Shown: positions 2,273 to 23,919 of the stretch, piece by piece
Numbering within the stretch: the first letter of the stretch is position 1
Layout of the letters: every line of letters begins with the position of its first letter
NCBI RefSeq assembly: GCF_963676685.1
Contig: NC_092347.1
Coordinates: forward strand, 17,174,001 to 17,238,000
Length of the DNA: 64,000 nucleotides
Source: Mytilus edulis
Lineage: Eukaryota
Direction: 5' to 3'
The notes under the pieces: model-generated
Seen by the model: only the letters and a program-made list of their open reading frames with translations
What the model was told of the DNA's origin: nothing
The model's database searches: none
Translations under genes and position numbers: made by a program

Positions 2273-5200
2273 TTACAACTGAATGGGTTTCCTTAACTGT
2301 GATAGACAATCGTCAACTTGATGAGAAATATATTTCGCTGTATTGGAATGAGATTTCGATTGGTCTCGTGATATTTGCTGTTCACCTAATGTCCCATTGC
2401 TATCCGCCATGTTATGTATATATCGATTAGTACGCTTTTTAAGGGGTCGTGTATCCATTGGTGTTGTGACTTGTCTCCCAGGGATTGTATTATGGTTAAT
2501 ATAACTATCAGAATGATCATTACAATCTATCACCATATTTTTTGAACTGATGTCTGAGTCGGAGCTGCTATTTTCGGAATCTATTTCAATGGCAGAATTG
2601 CTTTCATAACGTTCCTCGTTTTCATGTCCTCCCAGAACGTTGATGGCATTTGTTATGCTGTTACCAAAACTGGTATCCATTTTATCATTTTGTCTGTTGT
2701 CGTCGTCCTGCCTTGTAAGAGTCAAAGCAACAGGTATTGGACATATATCAAAGTCACTGGGACAGTTAACAATCTCAGCTTTCTCTTCAACAAAAAACGT
2801 GTCCAGCTTCTCTGATTGTTCTGAAGGTTTTTGTTGCTGGTCATTTCTTAAGTATTGTTGCCAGCTGAAAAATAGAAGTGTAAAATCAAAAGTAGTCACT
2901 GTAGACACATTACCATTTGCATTTATTATTGGTTTCATTTCCAGAACTGGTAGATACATTTGTTTTTATTAAATTCTTACAAAATCATCCACATTTAGTT
3001 TATCGTCTTCTCCCTTTTCTTTTTCTCTACAGAAGTAGGTACAATGTATATGTTATTGAAGAGGTTCTTACCTTGAGACATCCACATTTAGTTTATCGTC
3101 TTCTCCCTTTTCCTTTTCTCTACAGAAGTAGGTACAATGTATATGTAATTGAAGAGGTTCTTACCTTGAGACATCCACATTTAGTTTATCGTCTTCACCC
3201 TTTTCCTTTTCTCTACAGAAGTAGGTACAATGTATATGTAATTGAAGAGGTTCTTACCTTGAGACATCCACATTTAGTTTATCGTCTTCACCCTTTTCCT
3301 TTTCTCTACAGAAGTAGGTACAATGTATATTTAATTGAAGAGGTTCTTACCTTGAGACATCCACATTTAGTTTATCGTCTTCTCCCTTTTCCTTTTCTCT
3401 ACAGAAGTAGGTACAATGTATATGTAATTGAAGAGGTTCTTACCTTGAGACATCCACATTTAGTTTATCGTTTTCACCCTTTTCCTTTTCTCTACAGAAG
3501 TAGGTACAATTATATGTAATTGAAGAGGTTCTTACCTTGAGACATCAACATTTAGTTTATCGTCTTCACCCTTTTCCTTTTCTCTACAGAAGTAGGTACA
3601 ATGTATATGTAATTGAAGAGGTTCTTACCTTGAGACATCCACATTTAGTTTATCGTCTTCTCCCTTTTCCTTTTCTCTACAGAAGTAGGTACAATGTATA
3701 TGTAATTGAAGAGGTTCTTACCTTGAGACATCCACATTTAGTTTATCGTCTTCTCCCTTTTCCTTTTCTCTAAAGAAGTAGGTAGAATGTATATGTAATT
3801 GAAGAGGTTCTTACCTTGAGACATCCACATTTAGTTTATCGTCTTCACCCTTTTCATTTTCTCTACAGAAGTAGGTACAATGTATATGTAATTGAAGAGG
3901 TTCTTACCTTGAGACATCCACATTTAGTTTATCGTCTTCTCCCTTTTCCTTTTCTCTAAAGAAGTAGGTAGAATGTATATGTAATTGAAGAGGTTCTTAC
4001 CTTGAGACATCTACATTTAGTTTATCGTCTTCTCCCTTTTCTTTTTCTCTACAGAAGTAGGTACAATGTATATGTAATTGAAGAGGTTCTTACCTTGAGA
4101 CATCCACATTTAGTTTATCGACTTCACCCTTTTCCTTTTCTCTACAGAAGTAGGTACAATGTATATGTTATTGAAGAGGTTCTTACCTTGAGACATCCAC
4201 ATTTAGTTTATCGTCTTCTCCCTTTTCCTTTTCTCTACAGAAGTAGGTACAATGTATATGTTATTGAAGAGGTTCTTACCTTGAGACATCCACATTTAGT
4301 TTATCGTCTTCACCCTTTTCCTTTTCTCTACAGAAGTAGGTACAATGTATATGTTATTGAAGAGGTTCTTACCTTGAGACATCCACATTTAGTTTATCGT
4401 CTTCTCCCTTTTCCTTTTCTCTACAGAAGTAGGTACAATGTATTTGTAATTGAAGAGGTTCTTACCTTGAGACATCCACATTTAGTTTATCGTCTTCTCC
4501 ATTTTCCTTTTCTCTACAGAAGTAGGTACAATGTATATGTAATTGAAGAGGTTCTTACCTTGAGACATCCACATTTAGTTTATCGTCTTCTCCCTTTTCT
4601 TTTTCTCTACAGAAGTAGGTACAATGTATATGTTATTGAAGAGGTTCTTACCTTGAGACATCCACATTTAGTTTATCGTCTTCACCCTTTTCCTTTTCTC
4701 TACAGAAGTAGGTACAATGTATATGTAATTGAAGAGGTTCTTACCTTGAGACATCCACATTTAGTGTATCGTCTTCTCCCTTTTCCTTTTCTCTACAGAA
4801 GTAGGTACAATGTATATGTAATTGAAGAGGTTCTTACCTTGAGACATCCACATTTAGTTTATCGTCTTCTCCCTTTTCCTTTTCTCTACAGAAGTAGGTA
4901 GAATGTATATGTTATTGAAGAGGTTCTTACCTTGAGACATCCACATTTAGTTTATCGTCTTCACCCTTTTCCTTTTCTCTACAGAAGTAGGTACAATGTA
5001 TATGTTATTGAAGAGGTTCTTACCTTGAGACATCCACATTTAGTTTATCGTCTTCTCCCTTTTCCTTTTCTCTACAGAAGTAGGTACAATGTATATGTAA
5101 TTGAAGAGGTTCTTACCTTGAGACATCCACATTTAGTTTATCGTCTTCACCCTTTTCCTTTTCTCTACAGAAGTAGGTACAATGTATATGTTATTGAAGA

Positions 5201-5756
5201 GGTTCTTACCTTGAGACATCCACATTTAGTTTATCGTCTTCACCCTTTTCCTTTTCTCTACAGAAGTAGGTACAATGTATATATTATTGAAGAGGTTCTT
5301 ACCTTGAGACATCCACATTTAGTTTATCGTACAATGTATATGTTATTAAAGAGGTTCTTACCTTGAGACATCCACATTTAGTTTATCGTCTTCTCCCTTT
5401 TCCTTTTCTCTACAGAAGTAGGTACAATGTATATGTTATTGAAGAGGTTCTTACCTTGAGACATCCACATTTAGTTTATCGTCTTCTCCCTTTTCCTTTT
5501 CTCTACAGAAGTAGGTACAATGTATATGTAGTTGAGGAGGTTCTTACCTTGAGACATCCACATTTAGTTTATCGTCTTCTCCCTTTTCCTTTTCTCTACA
5601 GAATTAGGTACAATGTATATGTTATTGAAGAGGTTCTTACCTTGAGACATCCACATTTAGTTTATCGTCTTCTCCCTTTTCCTTTTCTCTACAGAAGTAG
5701 GTACAATGTATATGTAATTGAAGAGGTTCTTACCTTGAGACATCCACATTTAGTTT
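2273..5756 (-). pseudogene. Orphan duplicate of the SoxH 3' end (terminal exon 2864-2273 plus ~30 array units), lacking HMG and 5' exons
   Basis: The 228-aa ORFs at 2273 and 13137 differ at only 2 residues. Homology stops abruptly mid-unit at 5756. Confidence 0.8.
2986..5756. repeat. 93-bp tandem array, ~30 units (copy 1)
   Basis: Unit gagacatccacatttagtttatcgtcttctcccttttccttttctctacagaagtaggtacaatgtatatgtaattgaagaggttcttacctt. One internally deleted unit near 5330. Confidence 0.97.
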
Positions 5757-6059
5757 CTATTCATGTGGGATATTTTTAAAGTATATTATATAACTATACA
5801 AATCCTTGTTATCTAATTGTAAACAAAAACTTAGTAAATTATGTGTTTTGGTTAAATATACATATTGGAATCACCTATTAAAAATTTCAAACAATGAACA
5901 CTGACAAAGGCAAACTTGACACTTATTTCATTTATTAAACTTTGTTTTCAAAAAGAAAAAATATTTAGATATCATTGATTTTAAAAAAGGCAGTTCATAT
6001 GTTAATTAAGAATCTGTGCTCACCCATTACATTAGGAATTAAAAATGCCAGATTCTCAA

Positions 6060-6290
6060 AAAATTGTATTGTACAGCTGATAAAGTTGAGGATGAGCGTC
6101 ATTTTCCAATCGCATGCCCACTTTATTATATTTGAGGAATGAACTCATTCAGCATATTTCTAGCACTTGTCAGAACTTTAAAAAGTTAAATAAACATGAT
6201 GAATCTTTTTTTTATTTGTTTTGATGTTAACACAAGAAAACTTTACTATTATGGGAAAAAATTCTTATTATATTGTTAGCTCTTTTGAAT
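6060..6290 (+). mobile_element. Degenerate 3' relic of a non-LTR retrotransposon (CR1/L2/Crack-like C-terminal Cys-His motif)
   Basis: Broken frame reads KVEDERHFPIACPLYY.LRNELIQHISSTCQNF, resembling the ED-E-HF-x2-C-x2-Y motif found downstream of the RT domain. Confidence 0.55.
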
Positions 6291-6639
6291 TTTGAAGCAC
6301 AAGTCTTGATACTGACTGTTATTTGGTTTCCGGGTTTATTGAAATCAGCTATATCGTGTGATGCTTTTTCAGATTAACAACTCAGCAACTTCATGTTTAC
6401 CGAAATATTTGGGCAGGGGTTTCATCAGTAGCTCGCACTGACTTTCACTTATTGTTCATTATATGCTCTTTATAGACCCTGCAATTTCGAAAATGAAATA
6501 TTCTTTTCTGTTCTATTCTATATGCAGATTTCGAATTGAGTATATACTTAGAAAGTATTCGAACTACCTTAGTCCTATGTTATATATACGGTGTTATTTC
6601 TTAAAATATGTTATAACATAGACGTACATGTAATAATAC

Positions 6640-7009
6640 CCCCGGGGCGGGGGGGGGGGGGCTGTTACTTGCTATATTTTTAGTGGTAAAGGTGTGCCGC
6701 AAAACAGGGTCACTTTTTCATGCCCTGCTTGTTAGAACAGGGTCTCTCTTTCATGTCCTGTTAGTTAGAACAGGGTCGCTTTTTATGCCTTGTTGACTAG
6801 AACAGGATCTCGTATTCAACTGTTGAAGATACAGTCTAGAACCCGGGTCTAGAACTGCATCTTATTTTATACGGTCTAGAACAGGTTATACATTTTCTGA
6901 GCATGTATAGAAGAGGGTGTGTTTTCAATGTTTTCTGGTTAGAACAGGGTATAATTTGGCAAGTGCTGTCGGCACAGTTATACTCGAAAGGATATCAGTA
7001 ACCCCCCGG
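6640..7009. mobile_element. MITE with CCCCGGGG...GTTACT / AGTAAC...CCGG termini, 8-bp TSD and internal ~30-bp repeats
   Basis: aataatac at 6632-6639 and 7010-7017; internal motif tagaacagggt repeated ~8 times. Confidence 0.7.
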
Positions 7010-7055
7010 AATAATACAGACATACACATTTTATTTTACCCTGATACCCTGATAA

Positions 7056-7135
7056 GTGTCGGACTTATGGGTTGTCGGATTATTGGGCTGTCGGAGCAAT
7101 GGGTTGTCGGACTATTGGGCTGTCGGAATAATGGC
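7056..7135. repeat. ~16-17-bp minisatellite (tgtcggactattgggc-like, ~5 copies)
   Basis: Direct inspection. Confidence 0.7.
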
Positions 7136-8349
7136 GTGTAACCGATCTTTGTGGTATGTCGGTATACCATCTTTTTTGCAAATTTATGGTTTTCAGTTGA
7201 AATTAAATTTATTAAGATCAATTTTGTTACATCTAATGATCTGTTTATTTGGCAAGGGCCATGGAAGTCAGCAGGGGTTAAGAATGTCTGTTGTTAGACC
7301 TGTAAATTCGTTAAAAATTAGAAAATATGGTGCGAAGTTAACGAGAAAGCTCTCAAAAGGGACCAAATGACGTATGATCTAGCAACTTTTGGTCATCTTT
7401 CGGCCTTCAACAATAGGAAAAAACAATACTAGCTTATATAGCGAGTTATAACAGTCCCGAATTAGCAAATGCAACACAATTTTAACGAGAAATCCTAATT
7501 TTCAAAACAATCAACGAAAAACAAGAGTGATATACAATAAAATCTTTAAAATGGTAAATTTAGTGATACTATTCCTATATTATATTACAGTCAGTGTTGA
7601 ATAACAACCTTTACTTTTATATCCACTATTAAAATAATTCCGAATTAACCGCTTCTTACCGTTCTTAACTAAAATGGAAAGAATGTTAACTCTTTGATTT
7701 GATTATTTCTGTAATATGCATTTTTATTTAAAGCCCTATAGACATATAAGACACGTTTATGATAATTGTAATTAATCTACATAATAACAATTTAAAAATG
7801 ATTTAAAACAATGAAAACGATTATGCTGATGTGTTGTTTGGTGTCAAATCTTACAAAATGGCTGTTGGCTGAATATAAGCAATGACGATCCGAGTGTGTC
7901 ACAGCTAAAAGCAGTTTACACGTCTGCTCACTCGGCTCGTGCACTCTCACGTTAAATTGTTTGTGGCTCAAGGTGTTATAATAAGGCAAAACTCTTGTTA
8001 AAAGGTGAGAAAAATTGTTCAAAGGTGAGAAATTGATAATTGGTCCGTTATTATTGGACATTTCTTTTAGAATGCTTATATATATAGATAAAAACTCAAA
8101 CTTCTTCAAATTTATTAAAACTTGATTTGCCAAATAGATGGTAAGGCATGTATAGTTTTCTATTTATGTTAACTTATTCTTATATTGATACACGTGTATT
8201 TTAACAAGTTTAGATATCACTGCAGTTATTTGTTTCCAGTGTTCTTCTGCATGTAAATTATCTACCACATGTTTTTTATTGGACCCTTTCAAAACCATTA
8301 TACCTGCTTTCTACTTTTCAGCATTCACGGTAATTCCTATGAAAGAAAT

Positions 8350-11300
8350 ATGTCTGTTTTATGTGAATTACCCAGTCGAGCAATGGATTATGAAGAAGAT
8401 GATATAACAGATTTAATCTCTCCACCTGACTTTCTTCAAAAGGTAAGCTGGCAAACTGGCGCATACTCAAACGAAACACAACTGTTAACAAAGACTTTCT
8501 CAGTTCCGTTTAGATTTTTTTTTTTTCGATTACAAAAATTGGAATAACTCCAAAATCTCCTTTCCTCGATAACTTTGCATACCTACCTGAAAAAGTTAAA
8601 TTTCGATGAAACCCAAGAATTTTGGCTTGTTAAGAAAATATTTATTTGCTTAACCATACATAAATTTATTTGTAGTTTCGATACATGTAAGATTATCGGT
8701 TATTTGAATTAACTTATTCTAAAAGGTTATCAATTTAAAATCTTTATACAATGTAAGAACATGTTTGTGAAGTTAGCGGCCAAGGATCTCTGCATATTGT
8801 TTTTATCGCTTCTAACATTGTTTTTGTTATCAAGTCATTAAAACATAAACTTATGGTTTTAACATCCTGCCAATAATTTATTTGGAATTGGGCAGTGACA
8901 TGCTTTCCTAGACGTCTCTATACAAAATCCATCGGATGTGTACAAATTGATATTTTGTCTTCGAAACATGATTTATTTCATTTGCTTTCAACTAGCTTTC
9001 AGTTTAACTGCGAGTACTCTCAGATCAGTACTTTGTATCATTAGTGTTTTGTTAGTTGTTATGGGCTTGGTATCGATCTGATGACTCAAACTCTTTTCGC
9101 CTGATTTTTTTGTAAGTGCTTATGTTGTGATGTTGCACTTCCGACCCAGCTTAGGTTGAGGGTCGCGCATCTTCAAACATGTCTAACCCAGTCATATTCT
9201 GTATGTGCATATCCCAAGGGATTCATTATGTGTCGAATAATATTTAAAAAAAATAGACGTCAACTCTGATGACTGACAAGGTTGAGAATCTAATTATTCT
9301 AGTTTCTATTTTATCATTATGTCCACTGACTGCTTCACTGCAAACCCATCATGTATATACATCATTTTTCAGGACAAGAATGTCAGTTATAACAGAAAAA
9401 CAAAACGAACGTCGTTAATGTCATTAGATCTGGGTAGTCCTTCACGACTTCATCCTGTCAAAAGATTTAAACAATCTTTGTCGTTCGGGGTATGTAAACA
9501 CCTTTTTAAGCTAGTGCTATTGCTCCCATTTGTCTCTATGTACAAAGTTGTATAGAAATTGCTAAGATATTTAAAAAAAAAAACTCCTTTTATCATCAAT
9601 ATTTACTCCTTTAATATTCGTGTTTGTCTATGATTATTATTTTCTTCTTCATATTCCTGCATTTTAATAAATTTTACTTATTACAGTGTTCAATTTTTTT
9701 CAGGATATGATTTGTGATCCGATTATTGAATCGAAGGTTGTTGTTAATGACATGTCAGGCGACAATTATATGATAGGAGACGGGAGTCGAAGGTATGCCC
9801 TTCCTACAATGACGGGGACAAACCCTGACCTAAAGACTATCTCACATGATACTGTAAGTTTGAGAAAATTCAACCCAGCTAAAACTTCCTATTGTGACAA
9901 AGAGTTTCAGTGATGTTCGTTACGAACTAGAATGAAATATTTGCCACTGTACGATGAGAAAACACAAATCAATCAATCAATCTCAGTGATATTTCTTTCA
10001 ACTATTCTATATTTATCAATCTTTCCAGGTTTGCTAGACAGGCCATTGCATTTTTAAAACTTGACATTGCAGACAATAAAAACGGCAGAGTTTTCTGTAT
10101 AGACATATCTATATTATACACACGTCAATTCTTTTGTAGAACGTGTTAAAGCCCTTATATCTCAATACTTTTTTTTCAGATGTCAAGCGTTATAAATGGT
10201 AGTTATGATGAAGTTTTATCCAGTTATCGTATCATTGACTGCAGATACCCCTATGAATATGAAGGTGGTCATATCAAGGTCAGTACAAGGATATCAATGT
10301 ATAGCATTCTCGGCCTCACTGTATCATAAAGCAGTGCGATTTAAATATAAAGGTTAATGGTACATCATATGTGGACAAGTTTTTTTTATTTTTATTTTAT
10401 GCAATTGGAAATATCCCTGCACCAAAATGTCGGTATATATGAACATTTTTTGCATGAGATAGAAAAAAAAGACAACGGTAATAGGATAGAAAAAAATAAT
10501 AATATTAAAATGAGGCATGAAGAACTACTACTTCCAATTGCAATGATTATTTCGGTTGTAACTATGTTTGTCTCAGTAAACAAATATCAGTAAAGAGTAT
10601 TCTATACAAAGGAAATATATAGTGAAGTACATTAGGAACTGAATTTGTTTCTTTTTTCTTTGTAGAATGCAGAAAACATTTATGCCAAAAATGGAATAAT
10701 AGAATTCCTTGAAGATAATTGTTGCGTTACGAAAAGGCAGGTGCTCATTTTTCATTGCGAATTTTCGTCCGAAAGAGGACCCAAGCTGTAAGTCAACACT
10801 GTATAATTATACCTTAAAATTGTCATACGTAACTGAAATCATGTACTAGTATACGTCGTGTAAATCTTTAAGAATTTTTTGTTTCAATTTTCACTTCTTG
10901 TTTTCTAATTATTCTTCTTTGCGTAATATCATTTACAGGTTCACTTCGAACAAGAAATTAAAGTTTAAATATGCTAAATGAATCGTTTTCTTGTAGTTTC
11001 GATCAATTGTAAACTTTCAATTCGAAAGTAAAACTTTGTCTTAAATATTCACGAAAATGTTTCAACTTTGTCAAAGCTATGAAAATACTACTACAGTAAT
11101 ATTTCTTCTTCAACAGTTGCCGATTTCTCCGTAGTAAAGACCGTCAACGAAATAGTTACCCTCTCCTAACCTTTCCTGAAATGTACATTTTAGAGGGCGG
11201 CTACAAACAGTTTTACCAGAACCATAAGGTAATAATCAGATTTTATCTACGTGCAACATATGAATCGTATTTAAATAATTTTCATTATTATTAGGGGCGG

Positions 11301-12108
11301 ATTCAGCCATTTTTAAAAGGGGTTTCTAATCCAGGATAAAAAGGGGTCCAACCATATGTCCTCATTCAAATTAATTGATCTCATTGGTCGTCATAAAGGG
11401 GAATTCCAACCTCCGGAACCCCTCCTCTCCTAATTATTGTCACACAATATGCTTTCGTTACTCTTTGTTATTGTTTTTTTTTATAATCTCTTGCACTTTA
11501 AAGACACCCTTATAGATTTCGAAAAAGAGCAGGCTAATGCCGCTTCAAGGCAGCACTTGCACACAAAGTGGAAAAGGATTAATATAAGTTGCAAAACTTG
11601 TTTCCCTATCCACTATAAATAAATAAGTTTGAATTAACTATTATATTTTAGTTCAATCTGTCATTTTGTCTCAGTATATTGTATGATTAAACTGGGTTAA
11701 ATTCAAGAACAGAACATGCAATATCAATATGTGTTTAAGACATTTTGTCAATTTATATACTAGTAAACGTAAATATCGTTTTTTAAAGTGCTTTTCTAAG
11801 TCACTCATGCCACGGTTGTCCTACTAGTGCATTTTGCGAATGATAGTAAGCAGTCTAAAATACACTCAGTTACTACTCAAGTTTAAACTGAGATTAAATA
11901 CTTTGAAATGAGTACGATTGATGCCATGATGGCACTTCTGTTAGTATGAGCTACATTTTTTGGAATGTTTCAGGAACTATGTGAACCAGTTGACTATGTT
12001 CCCATGCTACATAAAGACCATGTGGATGACATCAAACGATTTCGTTCTAAATCTAAATCTTGGACTGCTGGAGAGAAAAAGAGAATACCTTTCTGTCTGT
12101 ATTCCTGA
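8350..12108 (+). CDS. cdc25: Cdc25 (M-phase inducer) phosphatase, copy 2; exons 8350-8442, 9373-9489, 9704-9853, 10180-10278, 10666-10787, 11117-11228, 11974-12108; 275 aa if it starts at ATG 8350
   Basis: All junctions are GT-AG and phase-compatible. Contains [16 protein letters not shown] and the catalytic loop [13 protein letters not shown] (HCX5R). The start codon is uncertain. Confidence 0.92.
8990..9240 (+). repeat. Dispersed repeat fragment in a cdc25 intron; related fragment at ~22530-22580
   Basis: Shared actgcga(g/a)tactctcagatcagtactttgt core. Confidence 0.55.
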
Positions 12109-13136
12109 TGTCAGAACCTTACAACAAAGTAATCCAAAAGTTCGCTCACCTGAACTTCAAACCAAATGAAAGCATTGCCACTAAAGTTCGCTCAACTGAA
12201 CCACAAACCGAATAAAGCATGCAGTGCGACAAACCAGTGATCCAAAAGTTCGTTCACCTGAACTTTTAACCAAATGATAGCAGTACTAGTGCCACTAATT
12301 AGTGATTGGTCATTATCACCATATTCATCTGCTATCAAATATGATGGTGTATTCTTCAGTAAGCGTGTTATAAGAATGCAAAATTCAGCTTCTCAAGTTA
12401 AAGATATATCTAGGGAACAAGAAATTTATGACACGAATCGCCAGTTCTGAGGTTGCTGAAAAAACTGTCTATAAAAAAACCTTTTAAAGACAAAAAAACG
12501 AGCTCATTTAATAGAATGACAACACAGTTATGAAGCAAAAGTTATGACCTCGGACTTTTATATGATAATTTCATACAGTTCTTCTATCATGAAATCAGAT
12601 ATGTTTCTTTTTTTCATTTTTCATGCTCAAGTAAACTTTATCATGTTTTATTATATAAATAACGAAATTTCGAGAAAAAATTGTTTTCAAATCTCTTTCA
12701 CAGCCGTAAACTTTTCACAATACTAGTATTTCATTTATGCTAAAAATTACATTTAAAAAAAAATAATGTATTAAAATATCCAATTCAACAAAGATCAATG
12801 TAATGCTGACAATTAACTGCAGAGGGGTTTCAAACGGAAGATCTGTATTGCAAATTTAAGAAATGTACATACTATACAGCTTGCAGTGGACTAAACATAC
12901 TCTTATTATGATAAGTTCCCTGGCCATCTTGATCATGAGTTGTGTGTTCCATATGCAATTGCCAGACACGTAAGATTAAAATAAAAGATCAATTTCGATA
13001 TAAAACTTTATAAAAAGAACTTTTTATGATCGTCAGTTTACAAGTATAGTCTTTTCAAAATAGTTTGTACAATTTTACCATTTGAATGCAATCATCAAAA
13101 CGCACTTCAACCGGCATATAGAACAAACTCAGCTGA

Positions 13137-16100
13137 TTACAACTGAATGGGTTTCCTTAACTGTGATAGACAATCGTCAACTTGATGAGAAATATATTTC
13201 GCTGTATTGGAATGAGATTTCGATTGGTCTCGTGATATTTGCTGTTCACCTAATGTCCCATTGCTATCCTCCATGTTATGTATATATCGATTAGTACGCT
13301 TTTTAAGGGGTCGTGTATCCATTGGTGTTGTGACTTGTCTCCCAGGGATTGTATTATGGTTAATATAACTATCAGAATGATCATTACAATCTATCACCAT
13401 ATTTTTTGAACTGATGTCTGAGTCGGAGCTGCTATTTTCGGAATCTATTTCAATGGCAGAATTGCTTTCATAACGTTCCTCGTTTTCATGTCCTCCCAGA
13501 ACGTTGATGGCATTTGTTATGCTGTTACCAAAACTGGTATCCATTTTATCATTTTGTCTGTTGTCGTCGTCCTGCCTTGTAAGAGTCAAAGCAACAGGTA
13601 TTGGACATATATCAAAGTCACTGGGACAGTTAACAATCTCAGCTTTCTCTTCAACAAAAAACGTGTCCAGCTTCTCTGATTGTTCTGAAGGTTTTTGTTG
13701 CTGGTCATTTCTTAAGTATTGTTGCCAGCTGAAAAATAGAAGTGTAAAATCAAAAGTAGTCACTGTATACACATTACCATTTGCATTTATTATTGGTTTC
13801 ATTTCCAGAACTGGTAGATACATTTGTTTTTATTAAATTCTTACAAAATCATCCACATTTAGTTTATCGTCTTCACCCTTTTCTTTTTCTCTACAGAAGT
13901 AGGTACAATGTATATTTTATTGAAGAGGTTCTTACCTTGAGACATCCACATTTAGTTTATCGTCTTCTCCCTTTTCCTTTTCTCTACAGAAGTAAGTACA
14001 ATGTATATGTAATTGAAGAGGTTCTTACCTTGAGACATCCACATTTAGTTTATCGTCTTCTCCCTTTTCCTTTTCTCTACAGAAGTAGGTACAATGTATA
14101 TGTAATTACAGAGGTTCTTACCTTGAGACATCCACATTTAGTTTATCGTCTTCTCCCTTTTCCTTTTCTTTACAGAAGTAGGTATAATGTATATGTTATT
14201 GAAGAGGTTCTTACCTTGAGACATCCACATTTAGTTTATCGTCTTCTCCCTTTCCTTTTCTCTACAGAAGTAGGTACAATGTATATGTAATTGAAGAGGT
14301 TCTTACCTTGAGACATCCACATTTAGTTTATCGTCTTCTCCCTTTTCCTTTTCTCTACAGAAGTAAGTACAATGTATATGTAATTGAAGAGGTTCTTACC
14401 TTGAGACATCCACATTTAGTTTATCGTCTTCTCCCTTTTCCTTTTCTCTACAGAAGTAAGTACAATGTATATGTAATTACAGAGGTTCTTACCTTGAGAC
14501 ATCCACATTTAGTTTATCGTCTTCTCCCTTTTCCTTTTCTCTACAGAAGTAAGTACAATGTATATGTAATTGAAGAGGTTCTTACCTTGAGACATCCACA
14601 TTTAGTTTATCGTCTTCTCCCTTTTCCTTTTCTCTACAGAAGTAGGTACAATGTATATGTAATTGAAGAGGTTCTTACCTTGAGACATCCACATTTAGTT
14701 TATCGTCTTCTCCCTTTTCCTTTTGTCTACAGAAGTAGGTACAATGTATATGTTATTGAAGAGGTTCTTACCTTGAGACATCCACATTTAGTTTATCGTC
14801 TTCTCCCTTTTCCTTTTGTCTACAGAAGTAGGTACAATGTATATGTTATTGAAGAGGTTCTTACCTTGAGACATCAACATTTAGTTTATCGTCTTCTCCC
14901 TTTTCCTTTTCTTTACAGAAGTAGGTACAATGTATATGTAATTGAAGAGGTTCTTACCTTGAGACATCCACATTTAGTTTATCGTCTTCTCCCTTTTCCT
15001 TTTCTTTACAGAAGTAGGTACAATGAATATGTAATTGAAGAGGTTCTTACCTTGAGACATCCACATTTAGTTTATCGTCTTCTCCCTTTTCCTTTTCTTT
15101 ACAGAAGTAGGTACAATGTATATGTAATTGAAGAGGTTCTTACCTTGAGACATCCACATTTAGTTTATCGTCTTCTCCCTTTTCCTTTTCTTTACAGAAG
15201 TAGGTACAATGTATATGTAATTGAAGAGGTTCTTACCTTGAGACATCCACATTTAGTTTATCGTCTTCTCCCTTTTCCTTTTCTCTACAGAAGTAGGTAC
15301 AATGTATATGTTATTGAAGAGGTTCTTACCTTGAGACATCCACATTTAGTTTATCGTCTTCTCCCTTTTCCTTTTCTTTACAGAAGTAGGTACAATGTAT
15401 ATGTAATTGAAGAGGTTCTTACCTAGAGACATCCACATTTAGTTTATCGTCTTCTCCCTTTTCCTTTTCTTTACAGAAGTAGGTACAATGTTTATTTTAT
15501 TGAAGAGGTTCTTACCTTGAGACATCCACATTTAGTTTATCGTCTTCTCCCTTTTCCTTTTCTCTACAGAAGTAGGTACAATGTATATGTAATTGAAGAG
15601 GTTCTTACCTAGAGACATCCACATTTAGTTTATCGTCTTCTCCCTTTTCCTTTTCTTTACAGAAGTAGGTACAATGTATATGTTATTGAAGAGGTTCTTA
15701 CCTAGAGACATCCACATTTAGTTTATCGTCTTCTCCCTTTTCCTTTTCTCTACAGAAGTAGGTACAATGTATATGTAATTGAAGAGGTTCTTACCTTGAG
15801 ACATCCACATTTAGTTTATCGTCTTCTCCCTTTTCTTTTTCTCTACAGAAGTAGGTACAATGTATATGTAATTGAAGAGGTTCTTACCTTGAGACATCCA
15901 CATTTAGTTTATCGTCTTCTCCATTTTCTTTTTCTCTACAGAAGTAGGTACAATGTATATGTAATTGAAGAGGTTCTTACCTTGAGACATCCACATTTAG
16001 TTTATCGTCTTCTCCCTTTTCTTTTTCCTACAGAAGTAGGTACAATGTATATGTTATTGAAGAGGTTCTTACCTAGAGACATCCACATTTAGTTTATCGT

Positions 16101-19100
16101 CTTCACCTTTTTCCTTTTCTCTACAGAAGTAGGTACAATGTATATGTTATTGAAGAGGTTCTTACCTTGAGACATCCACATTTAGTTTATCGTCTTCTCC
16201 TTTCTCCTTTTCTCTACAGAAGTAGGTACAATGTATATGTAATTGAAGAGGTTCTTACCTAGAGACATCCACATTTAGTTTATCGTCTTCTCCCTTCTCC
16301 TTTTCTCTACAGAAGTAGGTACAATGTATATTTTATTGAAGAGGTTCTTACCTTGAGACATCCACATTTAGTTTATCGTCTTCTCCCTTCTCCTTTTCTC
16401 TACAGAAGTAGGTACAATGTATATGTTATTGAAGAGGTTCTTACCTAGAGACATCCACATTTAGTTTATCGTCTTCTCCCTTTTCCTTTTCTCTACAGAA
16501 GTAGGTACAATGTATATGTTATTGAAGAGGTTCTTACCTTGAGACATCCACATTTAGTTTATCGTCTTCTCCCTTTTCCTTTTCTCTACAGAAGTAGGTA
16601 CAATGTATATGTTATTGAAGAGGTTCTTACCTTGAGACATCCACATTTAGTTTATCGTCTTCTCCCTTTTCCTTTTCTTTACAGAAGTAGGTACAATGTA
16701 TATGTAATTGAAGAGGTTCTTACCTAGAGACATCCACATTTAGTTTATCGTCTTCTCCCTTTTCCTTTTCTTTACAGAAGTAGGTACAATGTTTATTTTA
16801 TTGAAGAGGTTCTTACCTTGAGACATCCACATTTAGTTTATCGTCTTCTCCCTTTTCCTTTTGTCTACAGAAGTAGGTACAATGTATATGTTATTGAAGA
16901 GGTTCTTACCTTGAGACATCCACATTTAGTTTATCGTCTTCACCCTTTTCCTTTTCTCTACAGAAGTAGGTAGAATGTATATGTAATTGAAGAGGTTCTT
17001 ACCTAGAGACATCCACATTAAGTTTATCGTCTTCTCCCTTTTCTTTTTCTCTACAGAAGTAGGTACAATGTATATTTTATTGAAGATGTTCTTACCTTGA
17101 GACATCAACATTTAGTTTATCGTCTTCTCCCTTTTCCTTTTCTCTACAGAAGTAGGTACAATGTATATGTAATTGAAGAGGTTCTTACCTAGAGACATCC
17201 ACATTTAGTTTATCGTCTTCTCCCTTTTCCTTTTCTCTACAGAAGTAGGTACAATGTATATGTAATTGAAGAGGTTCTTACCTTGAGACATCCACATTTA
17301 GTTTATCGTCTTCTCCCTTTTCCTTTTCTCTACAGAAGTAGGTACAATGTATATGTAATTGAAGAGGTTCTTACCTTGAGACATCCACATTTAGTTTATC
17401 GTCTTCTCCCTTTTCCTTTTCTCTACAGAAGTAGGTAGAATGTATATGTAATTGAAGAGGTTCTTACCTTGAGACATCCACATTTAGTTTATCGTCTTCT
17501 CCCTTTTCTTTTTCTCTACAGAAGTAGGTACAATGTAAATGTTATTGAAGAGGTTCTTACCTTGAGACATCCACATTTAGTTTATCGTCTTCACCTTTTT
17601 CCTTTTCTCTACAGAAGTAGGTATTATATGGATCTCTTTCTACAATGGTATCATCTATTGGACCTGAAAGGTAAAGTAAAGTACTGTTTCAAATAAAAAC
17701 AAAACAGAGACAACATTACAACAACTCTTCAATTAAATTACAGTATTGCTATTCTGTAATACATGTACATCACAAAAAAGAGTAAAACAGATCCACAACC
17801 CTAAATTGAAAACTCCTCGAGTCGAATTCTTCTGAAACCGGTTTTATGACAATGGAATGTATCTAGTACTAGTATTAGCTGTTTGGAATGATTTGATTGC
17901 ATCTTTTTTCATGTTGCAGTATCTTGTTGGTTTTATAACAAGTTCGTTTCTCAACATCAAAAGTAGTGATTTGTCGCAAAATAAAGCAAATTCAAAGACA
18001 GTCAGAAAAAGAACATTCATTTGGAAAATATGTTAGAAATATAAAAATCATGAGAAGTTATTACCCTCAAACATGTCGTCCACGTGAGATTCCTGCTCTG
18101 CTGGTGGGAACGGGAACGGCCAAAAGTCTTCTGGATGTTCCTCTCTCAGCTGTGTCGTACTTCCGGGAAGAGTGGTAGAGGCAAGCTCTGAATCATCATC
18201 GGTAGTCTTGTCTGTGTCTAAAGTGTTGCTATGGTCTGCTTTCTTTGATTTCTTTGAAGACCTAGAACCATATTTGATTAAAAACAAAATGCAATGTTGT
18301 TTGGTGCAATCACGCGTATTCTTTAACTAACATTTCAATTACCTCATATACATATTGTGTAAGAGAATGATATAAACACACTGCAAGCTCTTCTGATTAC
18401 TTAAAAAAATCTGAATCCACTTCTTCTTATGATACTCTGCTACAGCAATCACAGGTTGAAGATTGAAGACCATCATTCTGATCCAATTATTTAAAGAAAA
18501 ATCTAGTTCAGTAAAATAGGCCGAACGAATAGTATATAAAAAAGGGTAGAAATGTTAACATGCAAAATGCCTTACGATTTTTTATTATCACTGTCCTTTT
18601 TTCTTGTCCTCTGTGCTTTCTTTGTCTTTAGCTCTTTATCCTCTACTGGCTTGTCAGTATTGTCCTTAGCAGACGTCTCGGGTGCTTGATCTTTCTTACA
18701 TACTTCATTTGTCTTTTCATTCTTTTCTGTTGCATTACAGGCTTTGCTTTCCAATGTGATAGGATGATGAACTGTTTTCCCAACTGCTTCAGCTTGAATC
18801 TTTGCCTGTAAGTCTGCTGGAACAGCTGAATTCATAAAAAGTTATATCTGTGTTCATTGGATAGAAAAAAAATGAATTATTTATATAATGCAGAAATAAA
18901 TGATAGACGATAGCTCACTAAAATAAAATTCAGCTCACTGTCACAGGGCATGAACACAAGTATTCGTCGCATATATAAGTTTTTGCTACATTGTCTCGTC
19001 TAGGAAGAATATCGCAGAGCACGGAACAGAAGGTAGACAAACTGGATATACAAATGACGCATGCCATGGTCTGAAGTTTCCGACTTGCATTATATGTCTA

Positions 19101-22100
19101 TCGTCCTTGAACTCAATTTCATAGTCCAGTTCATTTTCACTGAAAATGAATGTATGGTGCATATATATCTGTCAACATTTTATAGCGATATACAAAATAA
19201 TTTATTGTTATGCATAAATCAGCCCATTGTATTTTTTTCTTTCATATTCTTTAATATGTTAACATATCCGACCCGTTTTTCGATGAATATACGGTATATT
19301 CTCATTGTTGGGGGTCGTACGGTTACCTATACATGCTTGGATCCGCTCCATTTGGTCTCTGGTAGCTAGTTGTCTCATTCATTGTCAATGACATTACATG
19401 TACTTATTCTAAAAAAAAAATAGGTATTGGCCATGTCCATCCGAAAGTGTGCAACTGAATTTGTTTATGGTTTATTGATCAATGTTGACTTCTCGTTATT
19501 TTGGTCCAGACCTTACTTTCCCGAGACATCATTAAAAGTATAATACACGTTAAATGGACATCATCTATAATCATTCTAACTAATCATACCTTTAAGTCTC
19601 TCAGTGACCACAGGCGGTCTACCCCTCGGAGCTGGTATTTGAACAGGAACTGGTTTGGGGTGTATTATTGTGACATTTTGTACGGCATTGTAGTCAGGTA
19701 TTCCTGCTGTTTGTAATCTTGGAACGTCTTGAAAAGGAAGCTGATTTCCTGAGCATGAATATAAACATATGATATATAATCATCCCAAGTCTTATATGGA
19801 TGTATATGTTACAAAATGCCTAAATCTATAAAATGCCTGTAACATATATATATTGATTAGACCAAAATATTTTAGTAACTGATTTTTATGTATGATTACT
19901 AGTATAAAGAGCCCTAAATGATAAAGACAGTTGAATAAAAATGTGATATGATATTCAGTGTTGCGGTATATAAAGATGGATGTTTATTGCTGCGTACATT
20001 CAGTGATCATAGTAATAAGTGGTGCTGTATAGAGGTAAATATAAATAACATACCATTCAAGAAATTCCTTGGCTGGAATGGCTGTCCGTACATGGGATAT
20101 TGCATTGGTTGAACGATTCGTAGTCCTGGCGGACAGACAAATTGGTTACCTTGAGGTAGCATCGTTACAGGTTGAATAGGCATTACATTACGGGGTAATA
20201 TTGGTCTGTTTTGTTGTCCAATAAAATTAACAAAAGGTCCTTGAGGTGTCGGTGCAATTTGACTTGCAGCCATTTTTGGCCGACTTTCGTTGTATTTACT
20301 CCATAGCTGTCTGTGATTTAGAGTGGTTCCACATTCCTCGACGCCTTTCTTTGTCGATGGCTCTGGTTGATAAATCCAATCTAAAATTATTGAATTCTGA
20401 TGATTTAAAGAACAAAATAAATCAATTTAAGGTCCAAATTTTAAACAAATCATTAATTTCAATTGTTCTTTTTTTTTCTGTTGGGTATCGTCGTATTTTG
20501 TTAACTCTTTGTATGGTCCTCTTGAAGTCAACCATCCGTCAGTTTTAAATGGTTTAGATTTTTAGGGGAAAGCATTAGGCCATAGTATAAACTCTGAACT
20601 ATTTAACTTGAGGAGCCAACAATTCTTCATAGATTATAAGAATGATAATTTTGAGTTAAACCTAAAAGAATCGATTTAAGAATTGATTTGATCATAACGA
20701 AATAAAGAGGTATGCATGATTATTCACTTAAAACTTATAGAAAATTTAATGAAGTTATTTTATATTAAGGGGCCTCGTGCGTATAAACCATTTTTTTTTC
20801 AAATATAGGATTTCCCTTTATTTTTCTACAAATGAACTTTATCTCGTACTTTTAAAATTGAAAGATGAAATAAAAAATGTAGTCACCGATCATTTAAGCT
20901 CACAATCTGCCTTCGAAAGAAGCAGACGTTTTTTGTAAAATTACTTTTTTTCTGTTGAACTAATAGGAGAAATAAAGGTAATATCGAACTTGAAAAAAGA
21001 AAAACTAAACTACAGATATTACCCAAATTTTACAATAGTTTAGTTTAAGTACAGCTTATTTGAAAATAATAATAAAAAATATAGGTCATCGATGAGTTAA
21101 AAAAGATATTTCAATTTTAATGCCAAAAAAATGGCATTTTTGCACTAAAGGGAGATAATTTGGAGCTTTTTCAATGATATATACATTTTGAAAGTCATCT
21201 GGGGCCAAAACGAATTGATTTTTTTGAATGAGTTTTGTTCCATATGATAAAGTAACAACTAATAAAGTAATAAATCAAATGTGTAATGAAAACAAAAACG
21301 TTTATTTTTTTTCTGAAATTTTGATACCCGCAAGCCTCCTTAAATGGTTTGATAAATTCTCACTTGAAATCTATTTTAGATACAATTTCTTCTGTTAAAT
21401 CTTATCCTCGGGGTTGTTTTCACAATATCTTTATAGAGATCCTTTTTTAAATCCGTTTTTTTAAATTATAAACCATGATAGCAGAGTTCGCGAAATCTTT
21501 TTTTCCCTAGTGGTCCTTCAAAAAAATCTACTGGACCTCACTACTAATTCTATTGAAAAATACTAAAATTGTGTCAGTCCTATGCAAAATTTTGGTGGTA
21601 AAATCCTGAGGACTGACACTTTTCGTGAACTCTGTGATAGCAGCAAGAAAATATTTACCCCCCCCCCCCCCCCCTTTTTCAAAAAAAGTAAAACCTACTG
21701 CATGGAAAAATATATTTAAATTCGATATAACGGATTTCTATGAACTATTGCAATAGTCTAGAATTGTTTTAACTGAATCCGAGCATCTTCGTCTTAATTT
21801 TAATTGCTTTTCACATTATTTGAAGCACTTATACGTTAAAGAATCAGCTAATTGGGGGAAAAGTAAAGAGACAGTCCATACAATCTCTACAGTCACATGA
21901 AAATCCCAGAACCATAGGAGCATCGCTTTTATTGTTTTTCTTCCTCTCACAGTCAATATATGAAATGTAAAGCTGACAGAAATAGATTAGTGAATCCGTG
22001 ATTTTATGGAAAATGATGTAGAAATTGTTATTTCATGAACAGTTTTCATCATTTGATGCAGGGTTTACAATTCTACAGTAAAAGAGAGTTCCATTAGTAA

Positions 22101-23919
22101 TTTTGTGAGTGAATTGTAATACTGCGAACCTGGGAAGTCTTGTCTGTGTCTTGCTTTAACCCTTTCTGCTTCCATGTAGTACTTCTGCTTCTCATCCTTT
22201 GCCAAATGACTCCACAACTCTCCCAATTTGACACTTATCTCAGCATTTGATGCATTTGGGGTTTCCTCAGCCAGCTTTCCTCTTGCTGTTCTTGCCCAGA
22301 TCATAAAGGCATTCATTGGACGTTTTATCTTACCATTCTTATTCCGAGAACTTTGACCAGGTGTTCTATACGGTATCCCAGTACCTAATAAACGTGAACA
22401 TGTATATGATATACATTTTAGTTACAAGTTTGTATTTATATGCAGGAATACAACTTTGAATTATATTTCAGACTTTAGTATAATGTCTAAACATTACTTA
22501 TTAGTTGTTATAGTAATATTGTCTTTGAATTAGCTTTTAATGACTGCGAATACTCTCAGATCAGTACTTTGTGTGTCTAGTCTTAATGTTAGTTTTTTTG
22601 TTTTTGTGTTATTGAATTCATATCTATAAAAACATAAGAGGAATCTTTAAATAGCAATGTTGCATAAACAAGTCACTCATCGTGTTTCTTGTGTAATTAC
22701 TAATCCGATGACAAGTCTCATTCGATAGTTCACATCCGAGGAAAAGAGGACGGGCTTGAGGTTACGACAATTGGAACATATCTGTCGTCATCTATATGAG
22801 ACAGATACTCAATTACGGTCATCTAACTCGTGATGACGACAGTAATCATGAAAGCAATGCATAGATTGAAGCCCTGAAATATCGTATCAACAAGGAGATT
22901 TTTAGACTCTTTAGGACGGCACTGCCGCAATGTTGCTGCATAGAAATAGAAAGTTCACAGTGGAGAAGATGAGATAAGTCATTAAAATTTTGTTCTCAAT
23001 CGACCCTTGGTGTAAATTTCTAGATGTACAAGTCAAAATTGGCGCAAATGAATTCAATATTCAGTCGCGGAACATCGGTGGCCAAGTGGGTAATTAGTTC
23101 ATCTATACAGTAACTACTATTTGTAACCTGTAAATATTGAGATTGTAAGTTCGAGTCCCAACCGTTGCAGGTAGCATGCCTATCTTAATTGCAGGGGATT
23201 GACATCTTTCCTCTTGAAGTTTTCGACAAAAAAAATTGTTGAGCAAAGAGTGTCGAATGTGGCGTATATATATAGCAATCTCAACAACCCTCTATCAATC
23301 AAACATTTTCTTGCACATTTTTTTGGAAGATAACTTTGAGCGCAAATTGTAATCTTACTGTCATATCAGTGCAATTGCCGCAAAACGAATGCTGCCATTT
23401 TATTTTATATGATGTTTAAACTTAAATTATAGATTTTTTTGTTCTAGGCAAATGTATAATCATGTATTGGAGTTTTTTGCCTAATTCTTATAAAAAATAT
23501 TATTTGTTTAAACTCAATAAAAATATACCTGGCATGAGAGTAGGTGCAGGATGCTTTCTTTTTGCTGGTAAATCTTCTGGTAGAAATCTTCTTTTTATAG
23601 ATCCATCTGCTGACATAAAGAAAATCTCTGTTTTCTGACATTCCTGAGGGTTTATGGCTTGAAATGGTGTTGCAACATTCAGCGCATTTGCAAGTATCGG
23701 CATTTTGTCTACAGGTTCGGGTGAATGACATACAACTGTCTTAACTGTTTCAATACCCCGTCCACCTTTCTGTGTTAAATTAGCCGAATTTGTTTTATTT
23801 ATGCAAAGTCCATTTTCATTTCCCGGCGATAAAGTTTTGCTGATTTCATTATCAGATGAAACATGTTCTGAAAGAATTTTGAGAACTTGAGAACAAGTGC
23901 CTAAAATGTCTTTTGACAT
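13137..23919 (-). CDS. SoxH: SoxH/Sox30-like HMG-box transcription factor; exons 23919-23529, 22384-22130, 20380-20054, 19748-19590, 18825-18576, 18261-18065, 17663-17561, [micro-exon array 17560-13850], 13728-13137; 757 aa without array exons
   Basis: The spliced HMG box KIKRPMNAFMIWARTARGKLAEETPNASNAEISVKLGELWSHLAKDEKQKYYMEAERVKARHRQDFPDWIYQP has the Sox RPMNAFM signature and the group-H-like NAEISV and FPxWxYQP motifs. All 8 exons join in phase with GT-AG sites. A P/Q-rich region follows the HMG box. Confidence 0.88.
13850..17623 (-). repeat. 93-bp tandem array, ~40 units, inside the SoxH gene; each unit is a 45-nt gtaaga...ctgtag intron plus a 48-nt candidate micro-exon
   Basis: Reverse complement reads AAG|gtaagaacctcttcaattacatatacattgtacctacttctgtag|AGAAAAGGAAAAGGGAGAAGACGATAAACTAAATGTGGATGTCTCAAG. 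The array is certain; exon use is inferred. Confidence 0.95.
20769..21339. mobile_element. Non-autonomous TTAA-specific DNA element (Kolobok/piggyBac-like) in a SoxH intron
   Basis: TTAA flanks both ends (20765-20768, 21340-21343); imperfect TIRs ggggcctcgtgcgtat / atacccgcaagcctcc. Confidence 0.65.
21482..21634. mobile_element. 153-bp MITE
   Basis: TIR cagagttcgcgaaa / tttcgtgaactctg (1 mismatch); tgatag directly repeated on both flanks. Confidence 0.75.
23064..23270 (+). mobile_element. tRNA-derived SINE-like element
   Basis: A-box-like GGTGGCCAAGTGG (~23077) and B-box GTTCGAGTCCC (~23149) with an over-long spacer; no complete cloverleaf. Confidence 0.55.

What the first reader, a model, noticed from the sequence alone, without database searches (positions are those of the whole stretch)
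13850..17663. A 'satellite' that is an in-frame array of ~40 micro-exon/intron modules inside a SoxH/Sox30 gene
Seen: on the minus (gene) strand each 93-bp unit is AAG|gtaaga (consensus donor), a 45-nt intron ending cttctgtag|, and a 48-nt exon. The exon is phase 2-2 and encodes (R)EKEKGEDDKLNVDVS. The unique exon 17663-17561 runs directly into the first unit in that frame (..RDPYNTYFCREKEKGEDDKLNVDVS). Any unit's donor joins the terminal exon (13728, C-TGG) in frame. Unspliced, all three minus frames hit a stop in each consensus unit, including a TAA right at the donor. The unit appears to be the amplified 3' end of an exon plus the start of its intron, with an exonic TGTAG co-opted as acceptor. 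Inference: splicing could add 0 to ~30-40 charged 16-aa repeats (up to ~600 aa) to the transcription factor, a length dial set by splicing and by VNTR copy number. Established: SoxH/Sox30 genes are testis-biased in bivalves and mammals.
Basis: partly seen in the sequence, partly recalled or inferred. Interest (0 to 1): 0.93.

Follow-up and report, generated by a model that had tools for sequence, protein, structure and literature searches.

The report
Intronic minisatellite of unused pseudo-exons
A 93-bp piece spanning the end of one exon and the start of its intron in a mussel Sox gene has been copied about 40 times, but assembled transcripts from four RNA data sets splice straight past every copy, so it is an ordinary junction-derived minisatellite, not a protein-length dial.

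Summary
The sequence observation is real. There are 40.6 tandem 93-bp units at 13850-17623 on the gene (minus) strand. Each has an AAG|GTAAGA donor, most have a CTTCTGTAG acceptor, and they would give 48-nt in-frame 'exons'.

RNA contigs from four runs (four studies) confirm exons 2-7. All end exon 7 at 17561 and run on for 604-1044 nt. None lies on the units. In one run the continuation is shown to be the start of the terminal exon at 13728.

A Pinctada ortholog has one copy of the motif directly before WQQYL. A relative's contig has a 1.07-kb repeat-free intron at this position. Only 27 of 40 units are intact modules: 10 lost the AG, 2 are frameshifted and 1 is truncated.

The array fits the known 'mirage' class, a tandem duplication of an exon-intron boundary; the human ABCA7 VNTR is similar. 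Other windows of this genome were already noted in this scan to hold the same kind of repeat.

Two things remain open. Unit variants are biased towards synonymous changes (8 of 14, P=0.002), and exchange with the real exon explains only part of that. Contigs cannot exclude rare isoforms. A second array of about 30 units with a duplicate terminal exon lies at 2986-5756.

The parts
13850..17623 (-). Array A: 40.6 tandem 93-bp units. Each unit is 62 nt of exon-7 end plus 31 nt of intron start. The array lies inside the last intron.
   Evidence: TRF; unit table; zero RNA contig depth on 16800-17547 in four runs.
17561..17663 (-). Its last 62 nt are the first repeat copy. Its donor at 17561 is the one used.
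   Evidence: RNA contig joints 17663/18065, and all four contigs end this piece at 17561; canonical AG and GT.
13729..13849 (-). Non-repeated tail of the intron. It holds a degenerate last donor copy at 13844 and the acceptor TTTTTCAG.
   Evidence: Sequence; unit table.
13137..13728 (-). Terminal coding exon (WQQYL... to the stop). The 3' UTR probably runs to about 12630, with AATAAA at 12652.
   Evidence: ORF; the X12 loose end at 17561 is the reverse complement of this exon's start; held whole by 20 runs; AATAAA position.
18065..18261 (-). Exon 6
   Evidence: RNA contig joints; splice sites.
18576..18825 (-). Exon 5
19590..19748 (-). Exon 4
20054..20380 (-). Exon 3
22130..22384 (-). Exon 2, which encodes the HMG box.
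   Evidence: Pfam PF00505, E=4.9e-22; contig joints.
23529..23919 (-). Putative first coding exon. The ATG at 23919 is not verified.
   Evidence: ORF; the X12 loose end at 22386 matches the sequence before the donor at 23529.
2986..5756 (-). Array B: about 30 units of the same repeat, starting mid-unit, with no upstream exon 7.
   Evidence: TRF; sequence; unit table.
2273..2864 (-). Duplicate of the terminal exon. It is open and differs from copy A by 1 nt.
7157..13849 (.). Non-array part of the duplicated block. Copy A runs from 7157 on into array A to about 16620. Its twin runs from 3663 bp left of the window to 5756. Identity is 93-99.5%.
   Evidence: blastn.
5757..7156 (.). Spacer between the two blocks: a dispersed repetitive element.
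   Evidence: Own-genome search: 148 matches scored, 1257 first-look candidates.

Best explanation
The array is an intronic minisatellite of the 'mirage' type. A 93-bp segment straddling the exon-7/intron boundary of a bivalve Sox gene (62 nt of exon end, the 5' splice site, and 31 nt of intron) was tandemly amplified to about 40 copies.

Each copy is a pseudo-exon with a strong donor. By accident of the exonic sequence TACTTCTGTAG, each also has an acceptor-like site in the same phase.

In the mRNA the authentic donor next to exon 7 (17561) is joined to the terminal exon (13728). The whole array leaves with a 3.8-kb intron, and the protein carries one copy of the motif.

Shown: the anatomy, the lineage-specific origin, and array skipping in the dominant transcripts.

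Inferred: the copies are ignored because only 45 nt separate each donor from the next acceptor. That is too little room for U1 and U2 to assemble, so no unit is defined as an exon, and only exon 7 has a proper upstream acceptor.

The array was later caught, with the terminal exon, in a duplication of about 9.4 kb.
For: Anatomy and copy number:
- Array and unit anatomy.
- Exons 6 and 7 are single-copy in the genome. The repeat is confined to this locus.

RNA contigs of X1, X2, X8 and X12:
- Canonical joints for exons 2-7.
- Depth is 0 over 16800-17547 in all four runs.
- The exon-7 piece always ends at 17561, with 604-1044 further letters that lie on no unit.
- The X12 loose end is the reverse complement of the start of the terminal exon.
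- Contig lengths fit the terminal exon plus UTR.

Relatives:
- The Pinctada imbricata ortholog has ...LNVDVA at residue 488 and WQQYL from 490, with no repeat.
- The relative's contig L013 has one exon-7 equivalent, a 1074-nt intron without tandem repeats, then the terminal exon.

Decay of the modules:
- 10 units lost the AG and 2 are frameshifted.

Known class:
- Amphioxus mirages do not disturb regular splicing (PMC3087553).
- The ABCA7 VNTR includes the exon-18 donor and uses the first copy (PMC5954066).
- The minimal productive donor-to-branchpoint distance in human cells is about 46 nt (PMC11291888).
Against: - Only assembled contigs were available, not raw reads. Contigs drop rare variants, so isoforms of a few percent or less, or from stages not sampled, would be missed.
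- The tissues of the runs are hidden.
- Whether the sequenced animals carry the array was not checked.
- The direct junction was printed for one run only.
- Unit variants are enriched for synonymous changes in the exon-7 frame: 8 of 14 against 19% expected, P=0.002, and 0-1 of 14 in the other frames. Pure neutrality does not predict this.
- The 45-nt steric argument rests on human data and was not tested in this species.
Confidence: 0.8

Rival explanations
1. A minority or stage-specific set of transcripts includes one or more units as 48-nt in-frame cassette exons, for example through 138-nt introns that skip every other unit. This would add acidic 16-aa repeats to the Sox protein.
For: - 27 of 40 units are intact in-frame modules.
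- Each unit donor, AAG|GTAAGA, is identical to the donor actually used at exon 7, and the polypyrimidine-AG is comparable to real acceptors.
- The exon part is purine-rich, like splicing enhancers. This is my own reading of the sequence.
- There is a synonymous bias in exactly this frame, P=0.002. The nonsynonymous rate per possible change is 0.05, against 0.13 for intron sites.
Against: - No contig lies on any unit in four RNA runs, although exon-7 depth reaches 416. With up to 40 units per molecule, even a small share of such isoforms should yield unit words.
- The exon-7 to terminal-exon contigs are unbranched.
- Orthologs have a single copy of the motif.
- The acceptor-killing TAG>TAA change spread to 10 units.
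- Three of the eight synonymous variant types also occur in exon 7 itself, so they may have been imported from a truly coding exon. Without them the count is 5 of 11, P=0.045.
Confidence: 0.1
2. The array is skipped but acts as a regulator. Forty-one tandem U1-binding donors and purine-rich motifs would tune splicing efficiency or mRNA yield. Use of any downstream donor would give a stop-containing transcript that is degraded. Repeat length would then set Sox output, as proposed for the ABCA7 VNTR.
For: - All 70 units of both arrays keep GTAAGAA unchanged.
- In ABCA7, VNTR length correlates with expression and with skipping of the downstream exon.
- There is a TAA at each donor in frame.
Against: - No data here bear on levels, because contig depth cannot rank isoforms.
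- Zero variants across 8 donor sites is only weakly unusual given about 0.35 variant types per site. This is my own estimate.
- Mirage repeats are reported as neutral for splicing.
Confidence: 0.08
3. The array, or its size and the A/B duplication, is an assembly artefact such as haplotypes laid in tandem.
For: - The flanks of copies A and B are 99.5% identical, close to allelic divergence.
- No DNA reads were laid.
Against: - The two arrays carry different variant sets. TAA units occur only in A, and GGT units are common in B.
- There are internal higher-order blocks.
- The blocks are separated by a dispersed element, and identity falls to 93% further out.
- The ORF variant of copy B exists in independent Logan contigs.
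Confidence: 0.02

Closest known systems
Amphioxus 'mirages': minisatellite-like tandem duplications of exon-intron boundaries (Adh3 and globin genes; PMC3087553)
   Same: - Tandem units span an exon-intron boundary.
- Many units keep AG/GT signals.
- Regular splicing still uses the authentic site.
- Concerted evolution occurs within the cluster.
- The authors even proposed that an exonic part of a unit could later become a real exon.
   Different: - This array is far larger: 40 copies against 2-6 in the globins.
- It is in a mollusc.
- Each unit forms a complete in-frame pseudo-exon with both a donor and an acceptor-like site.
- Length polymorphism was not tested here.
Human ABCA7 intron-18 VNTR (PMC5954066)
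   Same: - The repeat starts at and includes the donor of the preceding exon, so each unit offers a GT.
- Canonical splicing uses the first copy.
- Retention of one unit is a rare isoform (about 2%).
   Different: - The unit there is 25 bp, purely intronic after the GT, and out of frame.
- A length effect on expression and exon skipping was shown there and not tested here.
Expressed exon-module VNTRs such as LPA kringle IV-2, and micro-exon genes of schistosomes (from my own knowledge, not checked here)
   Different: In those systems the modules are found in mRNA and protein, and their introns are of normal size. Here the modules are absent from assembled transcripts, and the 'introns' are 45 nt.

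Membership tests
Mirage-type minisatellite (tandem duplication of an exon-intron boundary) | Head-to-tail tandem units of minisatellite size | tested here: met
   93 bp x 40.6 copies, 96% matches.
Mirage-type minisatellite (tandem duplication of an exon-intron boundary) | The unit spans an authentic exon-intron boundary, and the first copy is part of the real exon | tested here: met
   Exon 7 (17561-17663) is confirmed by RNA contigs. Repeat homology starts at 17623, inside the exon.
Mirage-type minisatellite (tandem duplication of an exon-intron boundary) | Regular splicing uses the authentic site, and the copies stay in the intron | tested here: met
   Four RNA runs end exon 7 at 17561 with no piece on the units. 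The direct junction to the terminal exon was read in X12.
Mirage-type minisatellite (tandem duplication of an exon-intron boundary) | Length instability or polymorphism and concerted evolution | tested here: inconclusive
   Arrays A (40 units) and B (about 30 units) differ in variant sets despite 99.5% identical flanks, and internal blocks are repeated. No population data were available.
   27 of 40 units are intact. 10 lack the AG, 2 are 47 nt and 1 is truncated.
   Zero contig depth on the units in four RNA runs. The junction pattern is absent from the window, the genome and metagenome contigs. This rests on contigs only, so rare forms are not excluded.
   Single copy in the Pinctada protein and in the relative's contig L013.
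   The spacing is 45 nt. Human data put the minimal donor-to-branchpoint distance near 46 nt. No intron-length census for this genome was possible.
SoxH/Sox30 group of Sox genes | HMG box of the Sox type | tested here: met
   PF00505, E=4.9e-22, on exon 2.
SoxH/Sox30 group of Sox genes | Phylogenetic placement in group H; testis-biased expression | not tested
   Only collinearity with a Pinctada imbricata HMG-box protein (KAK3101003.1), which UniRef names SRY-like. The tissues of the runs are coded.

The most novel reading that the evidence does not exclude
A rare or stage-restricted set of Sox isoforms includes a variable number of units, so repeat copy number and splicing choice together tune an acidic repeat tract in a spermatogenesis transcription factor. 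The synonymous-biased unit variation would then reflect selection on translated units, showing a mirage repeat caught while turning into real exons.
Probability: 0.1. Interest if true: 0.7.

Novelty: new member of a known kind. Interest (0 to 1): 0.27.

Why it matters
As it stands, this is one more junction-derived minisatellite. It is unusually large and tidy, and it sits in a genome where this scan has already noted several others.

Its modest value is as a natural experiment in splice-site choice. It offers 41 near-identical strong donors in a row and about 30 acceptor-like sites in phase, yet only the first donor is seen in use.

If the 45-nt spacing is what silences the copies, small indels could switch on dozens of in-frame exons at once. 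That is the route to exon and intron gain proposed for amphioxus mirages.

The synonymous bias among the units is worth a proper population-level test.

Tried and rejected
I followed the tool's advice and laid 16800-22400, which holds about 9 units plus the upstream exons. The terminal-exon side and array B were therefore never laid.
- A protein search with the terminal exon found only genomic ORF fragments and one full-length ortholog. It found no spliced model from this species, so it gives no isoform evidence either way.
- A degenerate junction pattern covering both the unit-unit and the exon-7/terminal junctions found nothing in the metagenome contigs. Neither junction was found, so this is uninformative. 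It also found nothing in the genome, so there is no processed retrocopy.
- The plus strand has an open frame through the units. One open frame in six is expected by chance for 31 codons. The unit variants fall on its second codon positions (my own reading of the register). Nothing like it is in the protein database. I rejected it as a gene.
Exons were searched one by one by reference.
- Recursive splicing was considered and rejected, because the acceptor-like sites are followed by AGAAAA and not by a regenerated GT donor.
Full report
**Observation**

TRF reports a single array at 13850-17623 with period 93, 40.6 copies and 96% matches. I read the minus strand and cut it at every GTAAGAA.
- All 40 units begin with the same donor-like GTAAGAA, preceded by AAG. 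Nine units have TAG instead at the -3 position.
- 30 units have CTTCTGTAG ending 45 nt downstream. 10 units have TAA in place of that TAG.
- 37 'exon' parts are 48 nt. Two have lost one base (units at 16072 and 14306), and the last unit is truncated.
- That leaves 27 of 40 intact modules.

The consensus 48-mer reads EKEKGEDDKLNVDVSR in the frame of the upstream exon. The other two frames have stops. Unspliced, every minus frame is closed, with TAA right at the donor.

**The gene**

The host gene is on the minus strand.
- Pfam finds an HMG box in the exon at 22130-22384 (E=4.9e-22).
- RNA contigs define exons at 22130-22386, 20054-20380, 19590-19748, 18576-18825, 18065-18261 and 17561-17663, all with canonical AG and GT.
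- With a putative first exon at 23529-23919 and the terminal exon at 13137-13728, the exon lengths add up to 2274 nt, or 758 codons. This is arithmetic on exon lengths only. The joined model was neither built nor searched.
- Repeat homology begins at 17623, inside the exon at 17561-17663. The unit is therefore the last 62 nt of that exon plus the first 31 nt of its intron.
- After the array only 116-121 nt of unique intron remain before the terminal acceptor.

**RNA evidence**

The look-up of sequencing runs with the terminal exon listed 20 holders in 11 studies under two organism labels.

The tool advised a part with fewer copies, so I laid 16800-22400, which holds about 9 units and six upstream exons, with runs X1, X2, X8 and X12 from four studies.

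All four runs behave as RNA: introns have depth 0 and the joints have GT..AG ends on the gene strand. Three results matter.
- Depth is 0 in all four bins covering 16800-17547, that is all units laid, in all four runs. No record fits two places.
- In each run one contig carries exon 6 and exon 7, ends the exon-7 piece exactly at 17561, and continues for 724, 896, 604 or 1044 letters that lie on nothing in the stretch. Pieces as short as 24-29 letters were laid elsewhere, so a 48-nt unit exon would have been placed.
- For X12 the 30 letters beyond 17561 are printed. They are the reverse complement of the first 30 letters of the terminal exon at 13728.

The four continuation lengths fit the 592-nt terminal exon plus part of a 3' UTR. 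An AATAAA lies at 12652, near the predicted end of the X12 contig.

Exons 6 and 7 are single-copy in the genome, so these transcripts come from this gene.

The dominant mRNA therefore joins 17561 directly to the terminal acceptor and discards the array.

Caveats:
- These are contigs, which drop rare variants.
- The tissues are hidden.
- Whether these animals carry the array was not checked.

**Comparative evidence**

An exhaustive HMMER search with the terminal exon found one full-length relative, P0007, a Pinctada imbricata protein of 823 aa (KAK3101003.1) with an HMG box.
- Its residues 461-488 align with exon 7 and end in LNVDVA.
- Its residues from 490 align with the terminal exon, starting WQQYL.
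- So it has one copy of the motif, directly abutting the terminal exon.

A JGI-held contig of a closer relative (L013, 48% identity in the terminal exon) has one exon-7 equivalent at 2727-2825, a donor AT|GTAAGT, and an intron of about 1074 nt in which TRF finds no tandem repeat, followed by the terminal exon.

The array is a lineage-specific insertion into an old, conserved exon junction.

**Variation among the units**

Across 64 full-length units of both arrays there are 18 variant types in the 45 'intron' sites and 13 in the 48 'exon' sites. A 14th exon-part type (GAC to AAC) was seen by eye in a 92-nt unit and added.

| Test | Synonymous | P |
|---|---|---|
| Exon-7 frame, 19% expected | 8 of 14 | 0.002 |
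| Second frame | 1 of 14 | not significant |
| Third frame | 0 of 14 | not significant |
| Exon-7 frame, without the two homopolymer-edge sites | 6 of 10 | 0.016 |
| Exon-7 frame, without the three types shared with exon 7 | 5 of 11 | 0.045 |

The first four rows come and the last.

Rates per possible change are 0.29 for synonymous, 0.05 for nonsynonymous and 0.13 for intron sites.

This is a real oddity, but it is weak evidence for translation.
- The events are few and not independent. For example, the block 16816-16630 recurs at 15515-15329.
- Three of the eight synonymous types are also seen in exon 7 itself. The reference exon carries the AAA and GGT variants. All four RNA runs carry G instead of that A (17596). 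X8 carries the AAA variant at 17602.
- Exchange between the truly coding exon 7 and the units could import pre-filtered, synonymous variants.
- Against selection on the units, the acceptor-killing TAG>TAA change has spread to 10 units of array A.

**The second array and the duplication**

The same repeat forms array B at 2986-5756, with about 30 units. It begins mid-unit and has no exon 7 upstream. It is followed by a copy of the intron tail and the terminal exon.
- Window 1-2990 matches 10866-13854 at 99.5%. The match extends 3.66 kb to the left of the window at 93-99%.
- The terminal-exon copies differ by one base, and both are open.
- The 1.4-kb spacer at 5757-7156 is a dispersed repeat.
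- The arrays differ in their variant sets. There are no TAA units in B, and GGT units are frequent there. This indicates fast array turnover.
- Which terminal-exon copy the mRNA uses could not be told. All runs hold every sampled word of copy A.

**What it is**

Tandem repeats that span an exon-intron boundary are a described class.
- In amphioxus they are called 'mirages'. They are reported not to disturb regular splicing although many units keep AG/GT signals, and they were proposed as a route to new exons and introns (PMC3087553).
- The human ABCA7 intron-18 VNTR likewise starts at and includes the exon-18 donor. The first copy is the one used, retention of one unit is a roughly 2% isoform, and repeat length correlates with expression and downstream exon skipping (PMC5954066).
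- Notes of this scan on other windows of the same genome (s1-832272, s1-832281, s1-838980) describe the same kind of junction-seeded minisatellite as frequent in this mussel, with splicing at the copy next to the exon. My RNA result agrees for this locus.

**Mechanism**

Shown:
- The origin is a boundary duplication.
- The array is specific to this lineage.
- The array is skipped in the dominant mRNA.

Inferred: the copies are ignored because each donor is only 45 nt from the next acceptor-like site. In human cells productive splicing needs about 46 nt or more between donor and branchpoint alone (PMC11291888). U1 and U2 therefore could not assemble across a unit 'intron', and no unit could be defined as an exon. 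Exon 7 has a genuine upstream acceptor and is defined normally. This was not tested for this species.

**Verdict**

- The micro-exon, length-dial interpretation is not supported.
- The array is a new and large member of a known kind.
- Two loose ends remain: the synonymous bias, and the limits of contig-only RNA evidence.

Noticed in passing
window 2986-5756 and 2273-2864: A second array of the same 93-bp repeat (about 30 units) with a duplicate, open terminal exon. It is part of a duplicated block of about 9.4 kb that extends 3.66 kb beyond the left end of the window.
   Followed up: partly
window 5757-7156: The spacer between the duplicated blocks is a dispersed repetitive element, with more than 1000 first-look candidates genome-wide at 76-93% identity.
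   Followed up: partly
window 20727-21661: Inside the Sox intron, many RNA contigs lie at 90-95% likeness with a summed depth of up to about 2600. This looks like an expressed multi-copy element and not an exon of this gene.
   Followed up: no
window 10180-10326 (+): An ORF with a rhodanese-like match and the motif [16 protein letters not shown], typical of CDC25-type phosphatases (the CDC25 reading is from my own knowledge). This neighbour gene converges on the Sox 3' end and lies within the duplicated block.
   Followed up: partly
L013 265-518: In the relative's contig, an 84-bp tandem repeat (3.1 copies, 76% matches) lies in the region equivalent to exon 6. It may be a coding repeat.
   Followed up: no
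window 17596 and 17602: All four RNA runs read C at 17596 where the assembly has T, and X8 reads T at 17602 where the assembly has C. Both are synonymous exon-7 variants, and both are identical to variants seen among the repeat units.
   Followed up: partly
window 49993-51463 and 40836-41354: Other tandem arrays in the window: 35 bp x 42 and 135 bp x 3.9. They are unrelated to the finding.
   Followed up: no
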